Source: Phallusia mammillata (Eukaryota). From it: a DNA stretch of 64,000 nucleotides. A program made the translations under genes and the position numbers. The DNA is taken from NCBI GenBank assembly GCA_965637545.1, contig OZ281495.1, forward strand, positions 25,544,001-25,608,000. Direction: 5' to 3'. The notes beneath the pieces were generated by a model, which ran no database searches, was not told the DNA's origin, and saw only the letters and a program-made list of their open reading frames with translations. Below are positions 27,250 through 37,302 of the stretch, in pieces; within the stretch, counting starts at the first letter, position 1; each line of letters opens with the position of its first letter.

Positions 27250-27848
27250 ATGATTTTATATTTTTTATCACAGTTTATTGCGAATTGTTTTAGCCTTCAG
27301 TTCTTACACGCTTTTTTCTTTCCATTTTCTATTTCAATGTCACCCCCTCCCTACCCTTCCAGCAAAAACACATTAAAAAAACGAAACATGAACCGTTTCG
27401 ACCCTTTTCCACCTACGGCCGGTCTTTGTGCATCAAAATTTTCGAAGATTTGGGCAAATTTTTAGGCAGTGCTTTGCCTTCATACGTTCCACTGGTCGTT
27501 GCTCAAATGTAAATATATACCTGGTGTGGTGAGGGCAACTGCTTAGCTGGCAACCACAAAGATTTCCTATTTCTATTCTTCGTTGCCTTATCCACAAACT
27601 TTTCAGAGGGCGATTTTTTATTCGACGCCAAAAATACATTGAAAACAGAAAACAAAGTCTCTCCAATTCGGGTTTTAAATTCTTTTAGGTGAATCTCGCG
27701 CTTGGTTTGTCCACAAGGTTCGTCAGTTCAACTGATCTGCAAAAAGAAGTTGTGTTGATATTATACGACCGCTCGGCACTTAAGGTTTTTAATTTGTAGA
27801 ACAGTTAAAACCATACAAGTTTAAATTCCACTTACACTTCTACATGAC

Positions 27849-30800
27849 TTATTTAGAAATAACAAAGCTGTTCCCTAAACAGGCACGCACAGTAAATGTT
27901 TTTCACGAAAGTGTTTGGGTTGCTGTTAACATGTACACTGAGAGTGACCTGACTTACAAAACGGTTGGAAGTGCATACTTTACCTCCACACGCCGACAGT
28001 GGAAATTGCTCGATTTCTCGCAAAGCAATGGCGAACACTGTCCCTAAATATTTACGCCCTGTTTCACTGAGCTGCAATCCAGAAAACAGGCGAAGGTCAC
28101 AACGTTCACGAGCAGTTTGCAAAAACCAGTGCTGTAACGACTGCATAGCTCTGCAAAAACAAATCGGTGGTTTCGTGGTAACTGTTGAGACGAAGTCATG
28201 ACTTTGTAATTGTTGCGTGACCTTTAAAGGTTATCATTATAACGTCTGATACGTGACTTTGTGGGTATAAGGGAATACTTGAATGTAAATTCGAACAGTT
28301 AGTTTGTATTTGCAAGTTGTTTCCATGTTTTTGTTTAAATGTTTAAACTTCACACCTGAGGCAAATAGCTGTCCCATATTTTCTGCAGAAATGCTTAATC
28401 ACCTGCAAATGTCGTTCTCATCCCTTGCCCAGACAAACTCATAAAGGAAGTCGGTCAACTTAGAAAGCAATTGATTTGGGACACCGGTGTTGCACATAGG
28501 TATGTCGGCAACTGTGTGAGGGTAGGGCAGACGCAGTGGTGCGTGAAAACAGAATGCCGTAACTGGTTCACTTCCTCCGGCCAAGGACTTGGTCAAATTC
28601 CGAAGACTGTCCGTTAAAAACTGCAATCAAATGAACACGGTTGTAATGCATTGCAAATACATCATTCGCATTGCGAGAGATCTGTTCTTACGGGATTCAT
28701 AATCCTCATAGATAATTAATTACATTTTGAAATTCTTTTAGGAAATTAACAGAATTCTTGCACAACATTTGCTGCTAAAACAGGGGGACTCTAAACAAAA
28801 TTTGGTGCCCGAACAGAATATTTTCGACACGCTTTTTTACCACAATCGGGAGTTATAATTTTTTAATTACCTTTAAGGCATACTAGTTGGGAATTCATAA
28901 GGTGGTCGACAAGCAAAAAAGGTTAAAAAATTACTACTTCATTCCTGCTGGGACAAAGTGCACATTTGCACAGAATAGTTTACTATTGACGGTGACGATA
29001 CTTTGACCCACATTTTATCACAGGCATACCACGCGTCGCAAGCGTGAACATTTTTAGTGTGTGCTTAGCGATGAACTGCCGGTTAATAGCCGGCGGTCGC
29101 TCACAAGAGCGTCAATGATGCTTGCCACGACCATACCTTAAAGTTGAAGCTTGGAAAAGCAAACGAATCGAGTATGTTTGCTTTGTCACCGACCTCACAA
29201 GTGCCAAGCTGCTGGATTGCGCAATCTATGAACTCAGTAACCTTGGACCTGTAAAATGAATTGTTGGCTTGATGGTTAAAATGCAATTTGGCTTTCTTAT
29301 CCAAAAAAGAGGTAACATAGAATATCAGAAATAATAATATTACGTGGGATAAATTGCGTTGGTGACAGAACGCGTTAAAATTGCTCACACGGTTGCGTTG
29401 CACGATTCGAATGTGCGCATCTCCGGAAAGAGATGCGTGTTTTTGCTGACGCGACAAACACTTACTGACAATAGCTCGATATTTGCGCATCATTGTGTAA
29501 AAAATGTTGCAATCGCTGCAAATGTGCTTTGCTACCTGCAAATTGTAACCGTGGTTTCCTTTTTAAATCGGAACAAAAGTCACTTATAAATACTTATGGA
29601 ACCGAAAGTGATTATACTGAACAATATCAGACCCTCATGGTCATTGACGATCACCGTGTATGACAATAAATAACTAATTTCCTAAAATGCCAGTTTTGTG
29701 ACATATATGTATATATATTCCATGTAAATTCATTGACTAATTGGTAAACTATTTTACATTTTCAGATGAATAATTATGACAACATTATTTCGTTCAGATT
29801 AAAAAATAATTTCGCAAGGCAAGACATTGAGGTCGCGTTCTCGAAATGTAGGTCAAATGGAAGTGTTACGCAATATTTGCCAAGTTGGGAGCACGTGGCA
29901 CGTTAGGTTTATTTGCTAACTCGTAGATAAATATAGCCTGGAGCCGGTAAAACAAGCCGACATGTAAACACAGTGACGTACACGCAACTTTGAGGTCCGG
30001 AGTAGGGGACTGGTTGCCTAAAGATGACTTCGCATTTCCACAGCGATTGCGTAACCTCCTTTACGGTGCAATTGGGCAAAAACGCTTCGTCATCTTTTAC
30101 TTCAACTGTAACAATGTGGAGTTAAAGATCGAGCAAACAAATTATGTTGTGCACAAGTTCCAATATTGGTACAGAACAAAATTAATACCTAGGGAAGAAT
30201 TTGGTGCTGAAATTACAACGTTTTGACGATCAATGTTGGTTGTTTTTGGAGGTTCTGAAAACACAATCGGTCAACGGTGTTAAAATTGTAGAACATATCT
30301 TTCCGTTGACTACTTAAAACTGGTTAACATAAACATATACTTGACTAATTAAAAGTAGTGCATCTGCAATACAAATGCACCAGTACTAAACTCACCTAAT
30401 GCAGATAAAATACTTCTCAAAGAATATTTGATTCTTGATTCCAAAATTGGCAAACCATCCATTCTGCAACAGGTAAACAATTTAATGTGTTGTAATTTTA
30501 TAAAGTAGGGAAAGCTATTAATAATACCTGGACAACAGCATGCAGCCCATTAAAACGCGTTGCGGAGAGCCGGTGTAACGTAATGTGTTCAGGACGAATC
30601 CGTCAGGAAAATCAAAAATTCCTTCGATCGTGTCGCCGACCACCGAATTCCAGTGCTAGATACAGGTAAAACGTAAAACACTTAGCTATGTTGTTCAAGG
30701 GGTGATTTTTTCATGGTATATTCTATGTCACTTTGCACATCAGGCCCACGTTTTTTTAAGGTTAAAATTAGTGTGTATAGGACTGTTACCTTGTAACACC

Positions 30801-33800
30801 ATACTTTAGTGACTAAATAAAAAAATCGATGTGTAGGCGTAGAGACAAGCGTCTAGTTAAACCGATTAGATTTTATGCGCTGATAAATTATTCACAATCG
30901 CTGCCACTGCATGAATACAATAAATATGGTATCTTTGTCGCCACCTAGGAAATGGTAATGTGAAACGTTTTTGTCTGATAGGTTGTTAAGTCCGTTAAAG
31001 TTTTGGGGTTGGCTTTTTTTCGTGTGATCCAGTCGAGATATCAGCAAAAACTTGCAAATTGTAATACATTCTCAGCACAAAAAAAGAAAAAAAAAATACG
31101 ACATTACCCTTCTGCTTTCAATTACAAAGAAAACTTCACAAAAGCTCGGTCTTGGTTGGGCGTTGAACACTTGGAAAGTTTTGTAGTCGCATCCAAATCC
31201 ATTCTGGCGAACTTTACCTTCATATAAGCTCGTCATCCCGCTTAGGTTTCCTCCGAGGGTGCTCTCCACCTTTATTAAAAAAACGTAAATGCCCTGCTAA
31301 GTTTTGCACTGCCATGGAGCTGAAGATTTTTTCGACATTTTCTTTAAACAGTGGCTGTTTTAATTATCAAGTATATAGTTGTTTTTGTTTGTTTAGTGTT
31401 TATCCTGTTTTAATTCAAAGCAGTTAAACTATTTATATTTCTTTTTCCCTACTTTTAAAGAACTCAGTCATTTTTCTTTTCCACCCCTTTTCACAGTTAT
31501 TTAAATCAGTCGAAAGCGTTCTTCACTAACATTTCAAACTAGGAATAAACCTCATTCGAAATGCACATGCATAGCTTTACGTAATCCACACCCAAAACCA
31601 ATTTAACCTTCATTCATATATTTCAGTCATGTTTTTGCTCTTTGTTATTTCATTTGGTATAGAATGCACAAAACTTGTTTAAAATTTGAAACGAAAGTTT
31701 TATTAAACTAAATATAAATTAAATATAAATAAACATAATCTGTCTTGTCTCGCTTACCGTGATTTCATACGACCCGTTTTGAGCGGAAGGATTTCGAATC
31801 CACATGAGTCCGAAGAACGGTTGTGTAGTCCTTGTTAGTGCTTCAAAGTTTTGCATTCTAATACACCAACATTTTTATCCAATTAAATAAAAATGCCATA
31901 CAACGTCACGAAGCAGGCCAGTAGCCTCAACACATCAGGCCAATAATTGCAGCTCATTTTTTACGCCGAAATTATTGGTTCGCTAACCAACCCTTTACAT
32001 TTTGTCTCGAGACAAGTACTAAATAAGTTGTTTTTATACCTGTAATATTTATCATATTCGGCAAGACCTACAAAGTCCTGGTCATCGATAAACGAAATCT
32101 GCAAAAATCAATGTCACCCATTAGAAAAGCTGTAAATTGTCATGTAAATACAGATGTTGTTTGTTCAGTTTTACCTGATTTCCGACATCGAACATATCAC
32201 GACCACCGTTGATAATCGAATCTACAGGAGCTTGTGTGTCGTCATAAATGTACTCGTACCATTCGTACACGTGACGTTGCGTGATGACATCAGACGTAGT
32301 GGCGAGTGCGTTCATAAATCGAATTAACGGAGTGTCATCTGCGGCGATATATCGCAAAGCAGGTTTGTTTTTGTCAAGGCTATCTTGCATGTTTTTACAA
32401 AGCTACATATTTGCTTTCAACTGTTATCACGTAAAATCCGAATCAAAAAGTTATTGGAAGCAGACTTGTCTACTAAATACATAATTACGCAACTTGATGT
32501 ATGTGATGTATACGACGTATTGGAAATGGAGTTTTACCAAAAGTTATACCGTTGGTTGTTATGGATTACCTATATCACCATTCGTTAAATCCACTGGGTC
32601 CAATGGGTTCACTGGGTTTACTGGGTCAACAGGCTCGTTTTCTCCCTATAAACGTCACTTAAAACTGTAAAACCACTGCCTATAGTTATACCATTATATG
32701 CAGGGTTGCCATCGACTTGAAACCAAAAATAAGGACAACCGAAAAATTTAATTTTTATACGAAACAAAACAAACGTTTTTGAATAAATCTTTGCATTTAT
32801 ACGAGCCATGACATATCATATGCAATATTTTGGCCGAAACAATCTGTTCCAGACACTCCTTGTTCGTCGAAAATACTTCACGCATTACACAACAACTCAG
32901 GTCTAGGTTTACTTTTACTTGTAGCAGGGATTTGACCAGTAATTGTTGAAAATAAGACAAAAGAAGGACTCAAGTCAAAAATAAGGACATTTCTTAGAAA
33001 TAAGGACAATGAACTTTTCTAAGACATAGCCCTTCAAAATAAGGACAAATCTTAGAAATAAGGACGGTATGGCAACCCTGATTATATGGCAGAATATTCT
33101 CTTACGTTTTCCGGTTCTTTGTCCACTACAACACTGTCAAATTGCCCTGTGGAGAGAAAAAATATGCTATTGTAGGTCCAGATTCGACAACAAACTATGC
33201 CTAGCCTACCCAATCCTCGTGTCAGAGTGGTCAACGCACTTCGTACTTGCAGCTCTGTTATTATTCTACCTCCTTCCCTAAAAACATTAACACAAATTCT
33301 AGGATTCCTCCAAAAGCAACTTTAGCTATTAGGGGCTGACGACAAAAAGCGTTTAATCATCCAGGCCTGTGTTTTGCAATAGTCACAACTGCAAACCCAA
33401 AACGAGCTGTATACATAATGGGTATGGAAATATGTTGAAAACACTTACCTCGATAGCAGCATATAACCAAGCAGGAAACGTTGAGGCCGACCTATCACTC
33501 TTACACTATTTACGATTTCGTCTGTTTCATCTGTGAAGGAAATAACTTCCAAACTGTCCGAATCTATTGAATTCCAGACCTAAAAACAGCTTTGTTTGCA
33601 ACGATTGTTAAATGCACTCGGTCCCCTTTTCGGTACAGGTTGTTGCACAAACATTAGTAACTGCTATATATTAAAATTGTATAAAAATTTGATTAAAGTA
33701 TATGTAAAAATCATACAGACGCACAAAATTAACAAACTTATTGTAATCCACCTTTTTTGTTCATAGACTGTTATTTATTTTGCGAAAACATAACTTGACA

Positions 33801-34230
33801 CGAAAAACCTGAGTCGATCCGACGGTGAAATAAACTTCCACGACACTTGGGTCGTCAGCTGAGTGAATGTGGTAAACCTCATAAGCGACTTGAAACGGCC
33901 CAGAAGTCAGATTTTTAGAGCTATACCGCAAAATTCCGCCTTCTTGGTCAGCCCCAACATTTCCATCAACCTGTATGTTGGTTACGTGTTTAAAATTTTA
34001 CTTTTGAAATTTGGTTTTGTTGTGCACAGCCAGAAACAAGTAACAAAGTTATTCAAAACGCGGTTTTTGGACACCATTAGTGGCCGATCGCACGTCAATT
34101 TGTCCGTTTTTATTCTTAGAACTACTTGATTACTAATGAGATAGACTAGCGAATTGTTGGAAGTAATCCAGATGCTTAAAATCGCACAGGCTTTTTCGCA
34201 CACACAACAGACACGGGGATGTAGCTCAGA

Positions 34231-34265
<35 letters not shown>

Positions 34266-37200
34266 GGATCGATGCCCGGCATCTCCACTGTTTATTATTT
34301 TTATTTTACTCGCCTGTAACGTAAACGTTGCCTCAGAAGCGTTTTGGTTTTCGATCCACATTAACGCAACGAATGGATGAATTGCTCTAGTGTAGAATTG
34401 ATAGTCTTCGTAACTGTATTTTCAAAGTCAATTATTATTTACTATATCGTTAACATGTCTAATTTCATGCACTGTCGAAGCGTTCAAGGGTAATTGCTAC
34501 TAGATCATAAGGGCTCTCCGTCTCATGTGATGATAATTTAGTTGAAAAACGCCTACTAAATGTAACATTTGAAGAGAAAGCATATACTTTTTAAAAACAC
34601 TAAAAACTAAGCTATTGACTGTTGTTCAATTCGGGAAAATCACAGTTCTTGCAATCGGCACTCACAAAACAGGATAAGTTTGATTCTATCACTTACTAAT
34701 AAACTTGATCGTATTTTGCTCGTTGGAAGAGGTCTGTGTTATTTTTAAATCGAATCTGAGGAAAGTGTCAAAAATGTGCATAATTAAGACGATGGTGTAA
34801 ACTACTATTAGGTTCACTTACTCGGTTTCCAAAGTCAAAGATATCGCTTCCTCCATCCTCGATAACGCTGTCATTGGTGTCGTACTTGTACGGAAACCAC
34901 AGCGGAACCCCTGCTGTAATATTGTCAGCTATGTTCTCAATGTCCTCCATAAGCATTTCAACCATTAGTTCTGTAAACGCAAAACAAACCTATTAAGTTA
35001 TTCTGTTTGAAAGCAGTTTAGTTGTTAAGCAGTTTGACCATAAAACTGCCTCTATTTTTATCAACAGGTCACCATTAAAAAATCTCAAACTACTGCGCCT
35101 CCAGTTCGAAGCATGGTGGGCCTATTTAAGTTTAAAAACAAGACACCATTTAAAAAGTGTTTAGGTTAGAAATCACGAATAGTGCATGCTGTGCTTTAGA
35201 AAAACGATTTGCAGCAGGTTAACCAGAAAAATATGAAAGTTTTTTATACTACAAACCTTGTTCAGGGCGATATGGCTCTTGCGGTGGTGGAGGCTCTGGC
35301 CCTAAAAACAAAAGATCATATAATACAAATCGAGTACACAAAATTACAGTTTTACATACTATTAGGTGAATCGCTGATTGCAATAATCCTGATCATTTCA
35401 GACATAGCACTCTCCACTTCCTGCGCTGTGACTTCAGTTCCATTGCCACTAAGAAGGTTACCACATTATAGAAGCAATTTTATGGTCGAGATACTTGGAC
35501 TGACCAACTTACCCAGATTCGAACTTAGAGAGCAGAGAGTATCCGAGAATAATCTTCCCATAATCACCTATCGCGTAAAAAGTGTTTGCGAAGCTATACT
35601 CCGGTCTTCCAGGCGTGTCAAGCATTACCTCTTGAGGTACGGTAGAGTTCCATTTCTTTGCAAAATATTTATTTCACAAACATTTTGCTTGACACATTTT
35701 ACCAAATCAAACTGAACCCTAGGAATGCGCCACAGCAAAAATTAAAGATAACAACGATATTCATCTTTTGATGCTCTTACCACAGGGTTTTCAATGATAT
35801 AAAACACTTGACAGATGGAAGGACTGTATGAACCAAACATCTGCGAAGTTGTGTACTCAAGCGTGTAACCGTCATGCTCCACTGAACCGTTAACGCTGCT
35901 GAAACTGGCATCGATGCTGCTTGCGACCAAGGAAAACACCTGATTATAGAAACAATTTGTGAGAAAGGTGCATTTGGTGACATTTGATCTTTTTAAGGCC
36001 AAAATTATAATTAAACTGTAAACTATTTTCTACAAAACGGGTTTCCATACTTCAATGTTGCTTTCTTTGTTAATTGGCTGTTCGTCTATCCACCAGAGGG
36101 CAGTGAAGGGGTATGTAATAACACTGGAGAGAATGTAATTTTGTGCCCTGGAAATTTTATGTCGTTAAATTGTTTTCGTTACAAAGTACTAACAAGCAAA
36201 ACCAACCTGTAAGTTTCGCCGTATTCCACAACTGTTGTCTGGCTGGGGTCATCGTCCCAAAATTTTATCTGAGTAAAAAAACAAAACGCATTACGATTGT
36301 AAAAATTCCTTTAAACTAAAAAAGGAAATTTGTTTATGATTTTGTTGTGGTTTAACATTTTTTTCACTGCACGTTTTTACCAGGGAGTCGAACCGGTTTG
36401 AACGGTTAATTTCAATAAACCCGAACCGAAACCGAGCCGCTAATTAAGTTACGATTTTCTAAAAACCGGAACGGAATTTAACCCCATATTTTGTTTGGCG
36501 TTGGACAAGAACCGGAATCGAACCAGTAAAAAATGCAGTCTGTTTTATATTTTGTGATTTTTCAAAACAGCGCACTGAAGAATACGCTAGATAACACTTA
36601 TAAGGCGTGTCAAAAATAACAGTGCACGGGCAAAACTATTTTGGAGTTTGATAAGGCAAGGGAGATGATGGGTAGAATTAAATCACAATAAATAAAAATT
36701 TGAACCGGTTTAAAAACCGCAAACCGGTTCGGACCGGATAATTTGCCCAAACCGGAACAAAACCCGAACCCGAAAATATAAATTTTTAAAAACCTGAACC
36801 AAACCCGAACCCTTAAAAACAAAACCAAGTGAACCCGAACCGAACCTGAATCCATATGACAAGCGGTTCGACTCCCTGGTTTTTACTATTTTTTTACCAT
36901 AGCCAGCAGCTATAGTGCTGAGGAAAACGTCCAACGACAAGTTTTCTACGTCTGTAGGCTATACCTGGTTGCCTTCGGTGTACATATCAAATCGGCCGTT
37001 TTGGATTGTGGTGACTGGTTCAACAAAATCATCAAAATCATATTGATGAAAGTTTGCTACATTGGTCGTTATATTCGACGAATGCGCGTTGATGTCTTCC
37101 AAAGCTCTTGCTATTATTTCCCCACCTAAAATTAAGAATCATTTGTCGCAGAAAAACTTTAAACACTGACTCGTGCAAACAAAGTTACGGAATGTAGCCT

Positions 37201-37302
37201 AATAGGATTAAACTTACCCAATTGTCCAGTAGTTGAATCTGCAGCAGAAATAAGTAGCCCAACTACCAAATAAAATGGTGTGTTTGGCTTCCTAAAACTC
37301 AT
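27849..37302 (-). CDS. Secreted multi-exon protein with three tandem copies of an unassigned domain and a Cys-containing C-terminal region
   Basis: Signal-peptide-like start MSFRKPNTPFYLVVGLLISAADS (ATG 37302); about 20 exons joined with mostly consistent phases. Repeat motifs are IQNGRFDMYTEGNQ, IEDGGSDIFDFGNR and IINGGRDMFDVGNQ, each followed by PSx(C/V)(E/Q)V(F/Y)(F/Y), WNS and (L/M)G(Y/C)xLLS. Junctions at 29.5-30.1 kb and the last exon (GNSFVISK*, 27849) are uncertain. Confidence 0.8.
32701..33080. mobile_element. hAT MITE in an intron
   Basis: TIRs CAGGGTTGCCAT and ATGGCAACCCTG; exact TSD ATTATATG (32693-32700, 33081-33088); subterminal AAATAAGGAC repeats. Confidence 0.9.
34215..34287 (+). 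tRNA. tRNA-Ala (anticodon AGC), intronless
   Basis: GGGGATG/CATCTCC acceptor stem with the G3:U70 Ala identity pair; D arm TAGCTCAGATGGTAGAGC; anticodon stem CGCGC/GCGCG with loop TTAGCAT; T arm CCGGG-ATCGATG-CCCGG; discriminator A. Confidence 0.96.
34298..34307 (+). terminator. Pol III oligo-dT terminator of tRNA-Ala
   Basis: TTTTT (34298-34302) and TTTT (34304-34307) about 10 nt after the tRNA 3' end. Confidence 0.7.
36381..36878. mobile_element. hAT MITE in an intron
   Basis: TIRs CAGGGAGTCGAACCG and CGGTTCGACTCCCTG; exact TSD GTTTTTAC; many subterminal AACCCGAACC/AACCGG repeats. Confidence 0.92.

What the first reader, a model, noticed from the sequence alone, without database searches (positions are those of the whole stretch)
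27849..37302. Secreted protein built from three copies of an unnamed domain with an acidic GGxD(M/I)FDxGN motif
Manual splicing reveals three homologous modules. Each has I-x-(D/N)-G-G-x-D-(M/I)-F-D-x-G-N (degenerate in copy 1; at 36965, 34822 and 32175), then PS(I/V/F)(C/V)(Q/E)V(F/Y)(Y/F), WNS, (I/L/V)(L)G(Y/C)xLLS(K/R) and a closing amphipathic helix. Modules are separated by Pro-rich linkers (PEPPPPQEPYRPE; EPVDPVNPVNPLDPVD), and introns fall at equivalent positions (after GN(Q/R), before WNS), indicating exon-block duplication. I cannot assign a named family. The Asp/Gly motif suggests Ca2+ or carbohydrate binding (inference), so this may be an undescribed extracellular, tunic-related or immune module.
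Basis: partly seen in the sequence, partly recalled or inferred. Interest (0 to 1): 0.72.

Follow-up and report, generated by a model that had tools for sequence, protein, structure and literature searches.

The report
Secreted protein with three unnamed beta-sandwich domains
A sea-squirt gene encodes a secreted protein built from three copies of a roughly 235-residue domain that no database names; bacteria, viruses and sea squirts share the domain, it probably binds sugars or another extracellular ligand, and its function is untested.

Summary
Window 37302-27723 (minus strand) is a 28-exon gene of Phallusia mammillata. Its product is the public, uncharacterised protein A0A6F9DJS9 (1002 aa). 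It has a signal peptide, three homologous ~235-aa modules, Pro-rich linkers and a C-terminal 10-cysteine helical domain. Each module has six exons with identical intron phases (0,2,0,0,2,1).

The module matches no Pfam, NCBIfam or PHROG family and no PDB sequence. A profile search found relatives in four ascidian genera. It also found them in giant bacterial surface proteins of many phyla (346 genomic stretches) and on 54 uncultivated viral contigs. This genome holds at least 75 copies.

The most likely role is an extracellular, probably glycan-binding, module. This is inferred, not shown. Calcium binding was not tested.

This scan had already met the same domain on other DNA of this genome, nested inside intelectins. 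New here are the stand-alone tandem architecture and the fold class.

The parts
37218..37302 (-). Exon 1: ATG at 37302 and the signal peptide (MSFRKPNTPFYLVVGLLISAADSTTGQL); phase-1 donor
36965..37125 (-). Module A, exon 1 of 6: N-terminal helices and a degenerate motif, IQNGRFDMYTEGNQ; ends in phase 0
36207..36268 (-).
36051..36147 (-). Module A, exon 3 of 6 (YPFTALWWIDE...NIEV)
35781..35939 (-). Module A, exon 4 of 6 (...PSICQVFYIIENPV)
35513..35655 (-). Module A, exon 5 of 6 (KWNST...ILGYSLLSKFESG)
35360..35448 (-). Module A, exon 6 of 6: closing helix (GTEVTAQEVESAMSEMIRIIAISDSPN)
35257..35301 (-). Pro-rich linker 1 (PEPPPPQEPYRPEQ)
34822..34970 (-). Module B, exon 1 of 6; the only module with the full motif, IEDGGSDIFDFGNR
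34697..34755 (-). Module B, exon 2 of 6 (IRFKNNTDLFQRAKYDQVY)
34314..34413 (-). Module B, exon 3 of 6 (HPFVALMWIENQ...TFTLQ); GC donor
33809..33970 (-). Module B, exon 4 of 6 (VDGNVGADQEGG...DDPSVVEVYFTVGSTQ)
33449..33579 (-). Module B, exon 5 of 6 (VWNSIDS...LLGYMLLSR)
33210..33277 (-). Module B, exon 6 of 6: closing helix (GGRIITELQVRSALTTLTRGL). The next intron is 63 nt, in frame and free of stop codons.
33106..33146 (-). Short spacer exon (QFDSVVVDKEPEN)
32570..32645 (-). Pro-rich linker 2 (GENEPVDPVNPVNPLDPVDLTNGDI)
32175..32338 (-). Module C, exon 1 of 6; motif IINGGRDMFDVGNQ
32040..32098 (-). Module C, exon 2 of 6 (ISFIDDQDFVGLAEYDKYYR)
31758..31857 (-). Module C, exon 3 of 6 (QPFFGLMWIRNP...YEITV)
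31108..31269 (-). Module C, exon 4 of 6 (ESTLGGNLSG...RPSFCEVFFVIESRR)
30528..30655 (-). Module C, exon 5 of 6 (HWNSVVG...LMGCMLLSR)
30396..30463 (-). Module C, exon 6 of 6: closing helix (MDGLPILESRIKYSLRSILSAL)
30189..30254 (-). Spacer exon before the C-terminal domain (EPPKTTNIDRQNVVISAPNSSL)
29982..30105 (-). C-terminal Cys-rich helical domain, exon 1
29137..29248 (-). C-terminal Cys-rich helical domain, exon 2
28403..28620 (-). C-terminal Cys-rich helical domain, exon 3 (FCFHAPLRLPYPH...)
27984..28150 (-). C-terminal Cys-rich helical domain, exon 4.
27723..27736 (-). Last mini-exon (completes D, then QLN and the TGA stop)
   Evidence: checked against the C-terminus of P0172

Best explanation
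Shown: this is an intact 28-exon gene of Phallusia mammillata. It encodes a secreted, N-glycosylatable protein of 1002 aa, the public 'uncharacterized protein' A0A6F9DJS9. The layout is a signal peptide, three tandem ~235-aa modules (residues 28-263, 277-512 and 540-775) joined by Pro-rich linkers, and a C-terminal 10-Cys all-helical domain.

Shown: the modules belong to one unnamed domain family. Its members occur in giant bacterial surface proteins (for example type 9 secretion system, T9SS, cargo that alternates the domain with HYDIN/VesB-type Ig domains). They also occur on uncultivated phage and giant-virus contigs, and in ascidians, where the family is greatly expanded (at least 75 copies in this genome).

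Predicted: each module folds as two N-terminal helices, a compact beta-sandwich of about 11 strands, and a C-terminal helix. The sandwich is closest to the galactose-mutarotase-like supersandwich domains of carbohydrate-active enzymes.

Inferred: the module is a non-catalytic extracellular ligand-binding unit, most likely for a glycan. The site would be built from three conserved loops: I-x-D-G-G-x-D-M-Y/F-D-x-G-N before strand 1, G-x-x-G-A-D-G-x-G, and D-P-S. These are conserved from bacteria to ascidians. Metal dependence is possible.

Inferred: three copies on flexible linkers would give multivalent binding. Only the middle module keeps all the acidic residues, and it is also the best conserved between species. 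It is therefore the likeliest active copy.
For: Gene and protein:
- The exon-by-exon match to P0172 has one splice solution per junction.
- The signal peptide is the only hydrophobic segment, and there are 13 N-x-S/T sequons.
- The Clavelina ortholog P0004 has the same three modules in the same order. The modules pair 1:1:1 in the tree, with 100, 99 and 96 SH-aLRT support.

Family:
- A profile of 24 first exons found 250 proteins at E <= 1e-3 among 1.84 billion representatives.
- A local jackhmmer run shows full-length ~215-235-aa matches in ascidian and bacterial proteins.
- 346 confirmed stretches lie in bacterial genomes of many phyla, and 54 on viral contigs.
- One copy sits on a 160-kb contig with giant-virus marker genes.
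- This genome has at least 75 first-exon copies.

No name.

Fold:
- The AlphaFold2 model has pLDDT 94 and pTM 0.92.
- ESM Atlas gives TM 0.50-0.58 to GH94, GH65 and GDE_N supersandwich clusters.

Context:
- CUB and Sushi domains occur in ascidian relatives.
- In P0118 the domain sits inside an intelectin fold.
- Bacterial relatives carry the T9SS sorting domain.

Motif conservation.
Against: - No binding assay and no ligand exist; the function rests on fold class and domain company.
- Supersandwich domains are not all carbohydrate binders; YidC P1 also appears in the list.
- I had no model coordinates, so I could not check that the conserved loops lie together.
- Invariant Asp, Asn and Tyr residues would also suit an enzyme.
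Transcription therefore rests on the public protein record, whose origin I did not verify.
Confidence: 0.5

Rival explanations
1. The module is an enzyme domain, for example a glycan-modifying hydrolase, lyase or epimerase. The near-invariant Asp, Asn and Tyr residues would be catalytic, and modules A and C would be degenerate, inactive copies.
For: Residues D43, D47, D50, N53 and Y69 of the model are 90-100% conserved across bacteria and ascidians. Position 152 is His in 36 of 44 bacterial-type copies and Glu in 36 of 44 ascidian-type copies. Aldose 1-epimerases share the fold class and are enzymes. Modules A and C have lost one or two of the acidic residues in both Phallusia and Clavelina.
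Against: The best structural neighbours are the non-catalytic N-terminal domains of their enzymes. Tandem arrays of up to 8 copies alternating with Ig domains are typical of binding or adhesion modules, not of enzymes. No enzyme family matches by sequence.
Confidence: 0.2
2. The module is a structural or adhesive building block without a specific small ligand. It would act as a spacer, an oligomerisation unit or a protein-protein contact in extracellular matrix or tunic, and in bacterial surface fibres.
For: It occurs in very long repetitive surface proteins beside Ig-like domains. Pro-rich linkers and the 10-Cys C-terminal domain suggest matrix assembly. The N- and C-terminal helices allow insertion into other folds.
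Against: A purely structural module would not be expected to keep an 11-residue acidic loop nearly invariant between bacteria and animals.
Confidence: 0.2
3. The module is a divergent member of an already named Pfam or InterPro family that my searches missed.
For: The local Pfam copy is not the newest. One bacterial relative carries PF26696, which the local copy lacks.
Against: PF26696 is PTL_trimer. It is the only family recorded for P0178, whose N-terminal part lies outside the domain. It is absent from the records of multi-copy proteins (P0011) and of the ascidian proteins. Profiles of 88 domains gave no PDB sequence hit at E <= 10.
Confidence: 0.07

Closest known systems
N-terminal beta-supersandwich domains of GH65, GH94 and GH116 enzymes, and aldose 1-epimerases (galactose-mutarotase-like fold)
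   Different: Sequence identity is 5-10%, with no profile match. This module is smaller (about 190 beta residues) and has flanking helices. It stands alone in tandem arrays instead of preceding a catalytic (alpha/alpha)6 barrel. It carries its own invariant DGGxDMYDxGN loop.
The domain nested inside ascidian intelectins
   Same: It is the same sequence family, motif and six-exon structure. In P0118 residues 127-360 are the domain, flanked by the two halves of an intelectin fold.
   Different: Here the domain is not nested in a lectin. It forms three tandem copies in a secreted protein that ends in a Cys-rich helical domain.
Giant bacterial surface proteins with choice-of-anchor D / HYDIN-VesB Ig-like repeats and a T9SS sorting domain (for example in Ekhidna lutea DSM 19307 and a Cryomorphaceae MAG)
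   Same: They hold 2-5 full-length copies of the same domain with the same motifs.
   Different: The bacterial copies are about 211-215 aa, alternate with Ig-like domains and have no introns. They form a separate clade from the ascidian copies (98 SH-aLRT).

Membership tests
Galactose-mutarotase-like beta-supersandwich (fold class) | A large two-sheet beta-sandwich that superposes on known members over most of the domain | tested here: inconclusive
Galactose-mutarotase-like beta-supersandwich (fold class) | Sequence-profile match to a member family (Glyco_hydro_65N, GH94_b-supersand, Aldose_epim, GDE_N) | tested here: not met
   No Pfam hit for the whole protein or for single domains. No PDB sequence hit with an 88-sequence profile.
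Any named Pfam, NCBIfam or PHROG family | Score above the family's threshold on the module | tested here: not met
   The precomputed newer Pfam hits list none on the module.
DxDxDG-type (EF-hand-like) calcium-binding loop | Asp at positions 1, 3 and 5, then Gly at 6, of a contiguous loop | tested here: not met
   The motif is D-G-G-x-D-M-Y/F-D-x-G-N, with acidic residues at positions 1, 5 and 8. Calcium binding itself was not testable here.
RTX / hemolysin-type calcium-binding repeat | Tandem nonapeptides GGxGxDxUx | tested here: not met
   There is one motif per ~235-aa domain, with a different order of residues.
Intelectin (X-type lectin) | Intelectin or fibrinogen-like fold flanking the module | tested here: not met
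   P0172 has no such region. Relatives P0118 and P0171 do.

The most novel reading that the evidence does not exclude
The domain family entered the tunicate lineage from bacteria or large DNA viruses by horizontal transfer, as is accepted for tunicate cellulose synthase. It then gained six introns and expanded to 75 or more copies per genome. It was deployed both as stand-alone tandem arrays, as in this gene, and nested inside intelectins. Together these would form a tunicate-specific repertoire of extracellular glycan-recognition proteins.
Probability: 0.3. Interest if true: 0.75.

Novelty: new variant of a known kind. Interest (0 to 1): 0.55.

Why it matters
The gene itself is already in public databases, but only as 'uncharacterized protein'. 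What has no name is the domain. It is a well-conserved ~220-235-aa family with an invariant acidic loop. Its members are found in bacterial surface giants, uncultivated phages and giant viruses, and one animal group, where it has multiplied to dozens of copies and combines with CUB and Sushi domains and with collagen-stalked intelectin lectin domains.

Defining it would allow hundreds of bacterial and ascidian proteins to be annotated. It would give a testable candidate glycan-recognition module in the closest invertebrate relatives of vertebrates. It would also open a clean test of gene transfer from microbes to animals. This three-module protein, with one canonical and two degenerate copies, is a convenient natural experiment on which residues matter.

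Tried and rejected
- Pfam on single exons gave only noise.
- ESM Atlas by features gave nothing usable, either for one exon or for one module.
- The search for homologous proteins on a read-through frame with 'region' found no candidates. With alignment A2 it found only 4 short proteins.
- I first took 36182-36310 for a duplicated 'PFF' exon. Shuffles showed no similarity (z <= 1), and the Clavelina and Phallusia proteins show it is the short second exon of module A.
- L014:8740-9111 looked like a fused exon. It is an in-frame intron read-through.
- PF26696 on P0178 was suspected to name the domain. It is PTL_trimer and is absent from multi-copy proteins.
- GenBank phages (INPHARED) gave no match with a bacterial or a viral copy.
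- PHROG tail-fibre hits on L108 come only from its collagen-like repeat, not from the domain.
- Foldseek on the C-terminal domain found nothing meaningful.
- Paper search for the locus and accession names found 0 papers.
- I built no spliced model. Exons were searched one by one by reference, and whole-protein work used the public protein P0172 returned by a database search.
Full report
1. WHAT IS IN THE SEQUENCE

The window is eukaryotic (about 38% G+C, short exons). I confirmed this through a near-identical public protein of that species.

Exon-wise local alignments between the three modules score z = 5.5-17.7 against 500 shuffles. Only one of the twelve pairs fell short: exon 3 of module A against module B, z 1.1. 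The threefold repeat is therefore real.

2. GENE MODEL WITHOUT JOINING EXONS

I did not build a spliced sequence. Exons were searched singly by reference. A profile of 24 paralogous first exons (alignment A1) was run against 1.84 billion representative proteins.

That search returned, among others, a Clavelina lepadiformis protein of 794 aa. A follow-up word search with it returned a Phallusia mammillata protein of 1002 aa, P0172 (A0A6F9DJS9 / CAB3263226.1, 'uncharacterized protein LOC104266555').

P0172 maps to the window in 27 colinear pieces from 37302 to 27976. Most pieces are 92-100% identical; three short exons are 75-88% identical. The few differences look allelic, so the record comes from another haplotype or individual.

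For every junction there is exactly one GT-AG solution consistent with the protein coordinates; one donor is GC. The C-terminal DQLN plus stop lies in a 14-nt last exon at 27736-27723. The CDS is thus 28 exons, 37302 to 27723.

This is the signature of duplication of an exon block. The intron after GNx is shared by all 24 non-redundant paralogous exons examined.

3. THE PROTEIN

- It has a signal peptide, which is the only hydrophobic stretch, and 13 N-glycosylation sequons.
- Modules span residues 28-263, 277-512 and 540-775, joined by Pro-rich linkers.
- Residues about 786-1002 form a separate domain with 8 invariant cysteines (10 in this protein). This domain recurs at the C-terminus of several ascidian relatives.
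- The C-terminal domain's model (pLDDT 82) is all-helical and has no meaningful PDB neighbour.

The Clavelina ortholog has the same three modules. In a tree of 92 domain copies the modules pair 1:1:1 between the two species (100, 99 and 96 SH-aLRT), and modules A and C are sisters. The triplication therefore predates the split of the two species.

Module B is the best conserved: 57% identity between the species, against 39% and 35% for the other two. It is also the only module with all the acidic motif residues. Modules A and C carry N-G-R-F-D-M-Y-T and N-G-G-R-D-M-F-D, and the Clavelina protein carries similar substitutions.

4. THE DOMAIN FAMILY

No name was found for the module:
- Pfam found nothing on single exons, on the whole public protein, or on ascidian, bacterial and viral relatives.
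- NCBIfam and PHROGs found nothing.
- PDB sequences gave no hit with an 88-sequence profile.
- One bacterial relative has a precomputed hit to PF26696, which the local Pfam copy lacks. That family is PTL_trimer and does not appear on multi-copy proteins or on the ascidian proteins.

Members of the family:
- Ascidians: multi-domain proteins of Phallusia, Ciona, Clavelina and Styela, some with CUB or Sushi domains.
- Intelectin hosts: in P0118, P0171 and P0019 the domain sits inside an intelectin fold. In P0118, residues 1-118 and 361-451 match Xenopus XEEL residues 48-166 and 171-260.
- Bacteria: 346 confirmed genomic stretches in Bacteroidota, Verrucomicrobiota, Planctomycetota, Acidobacteriota, Cyanobacteria, Chloroflexota, Latescibacterota and others. 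These are typically giant proteins that alternate the domain with HYDIN/VesB-type Ig domains and end in a T9SS sorting domain. One example is a 1931-aa protein of the cultured Ekhidna lutea.
- Viruses: 54 loci on uncultivated viral contigs, and one copy on a 160-kb contig with DVNP and topoisomerase II, which looks like a giant virus. GenBank phages gave nothing.
- This genome: at least 75 first-exon copies, about half of them in one cluster on contig 4 at 18.57-18.67 Mb.

Ascidian-type and bacterial-type copies form two clades separated by a branch with 98 SH-aLRT support.

Residues conserved in both clades (numbering of the model, which starts at P0172 residue 277):
- I41, D43, G44, G45, D47, M48, Y/F49, D50, G52 and N53 (N53 is invariant);
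- Y69;
- G113-A-D-G-x-G118;
- D147-P148;
- Y200-x-L202.

5. FOLD

AlphaFold2 on module B with the 88-row alignment gave pLDDT 94 and pTM 0.92. The model has two short N-terminal helices, an extended segment carrying the motif, about 11 strands, and a C-terminal helix.

Foldseek against PDB found nothing below E 1e-3. Its weak top rows were GH65, GH94, GH92 and GH63 enzymes and cyclic glucan synthase.

The Foldseek-independent aligner gave these values:

|---|---|---|---|
| GH65 alpha-1,2-glucosidase, N-domain | 9.3 | 177 | 3.9 A |
| GH116 | 9.2 | 194 | 4.8 A |
| GH94 phosphorylases | 8.1-8.6 | 166-183 | 3.2-5.0 A |

Below these came glucoamylase, glucosidase I, polysaccharide lyases, mutarotases and YidC P1. 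Nearly all of the top 50 carry galactose-mutarotase-like supersandwich domains. ESM Atlas neighbours are clusters named GH94 supersandwich, Glyco_hydro_65N, GDE_N and SOGP_2nd, at TM 0.50-0.58.

The scores are only moderately above background, so I call the fold class probable (about 0.65), not proven. I had no coordinates and could not test whether the conserved loops cluster.

6. HOW IT MOST LIKELY WORKS

Shown: a secreted multi-module protein, an unnamed and widely distributed domain, and a conserved acidic loop.

Inferred from fold class, domain company (lectin, CUB, Sushi, Ig, T9SS cargo) and tandem arrangement: an extracellular binding module, most likely for a glycan, with multivalency from three copies. 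Module B is the likeliest active unit.

Calcium dependence is possible but untested. The motif fits neither DxDxDG nor RTX patterns.

Rivals are an enzyme domain, a purely structural module, and a missed named family.

7. NOVELTY AND SCORE

The gene product is already a public, uncharacterised entry, and I found no paper naming it.

Earlier notes of this scan had already met the same domain in this genome, nested inside intelectins, and had noted bacterial and viral relatives. I confirmed both points independently.

New here:
- the stand-alone three-module architecture with its C-terminal Cys-rich domain;
- the exact 28-exon model and equal intron phases;
- the module-wise orthology with Clavelina;
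- the probable supersandwich fold class.

Among the proteins whose source names I looked up (30), the only eukaryotes were tunicates. That fits horizontal acquisition from microbes, but I could not search other eukaryotic genomes directly, and the tree is unrooted.

Noticed in passing
window 27723-30254 (minus); P0172 residues 786-1002: A second unnamed domain: about 215 aa, all-helical (model pLDDT 82), with 8 invariant cysteines. It is shared by several ascidian proteins after the beta-sandwich repeats (two copies in Styela P0042). It has no Pfam hit and no meaningful PDB fold match.
   Followed up: partly
P0118 / P0171 (Clavelina), P0019 (Phallusia 'cortical granule lectin-like'): The same domain is inserted into a loop of an intelectin fold, between XEEL residues 166 and 171. 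P0171 adds a collagen stalk. Earlier notes of this scan describe this layout in other windows.
   Followed up: partly
G000:C4:18574000-18673000: A tandem cluster with about 37 first-exon copies of the domain on both strands, apparently as multi-module genes with modules only about 270 nt apart. A second group of about 22 copies lies at C2:7.96-8.82 Mb.
   Followed up: partly
window 33147-33209 (minus): A 63-nt intron that is in frame and free of stop codons. Retaining it would add 21 residues between module B's closing helix and the spacer exon.
   Followed up: no
window 34312-34313 (minus): The donor of the intron after module B exon 3 is GC rather than GT. It is the only non-GT donor in the gene.
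   Followed up: no
L101 (ENA freshwater metagenome contig, 160 kb): A single-domain 315-aa relative (P0181) lies among DVNP, full-length topoisomerase II, GIY-YIG and P8_CR genes, which looks like a giant virus. In the tree it sits on a long branch next to the ascidian clade, so its placement is unsure.
   Followed up: partly
L014:8410-8562 (G000:C4 about 18604410): One paralog's first exon stops matching before the DGGxDMYDxGN motif (RSSNLTQHMQDYHPYQYYDDSNKVNT...), although its later exons are present. It may be a decaying or divergent copy.
   Followed up: no
window 36408-36821: Intron 2 holds short direct repeats rich in CCGAACC / AAACCCGAA units, of no evident function.
   Followed up: no
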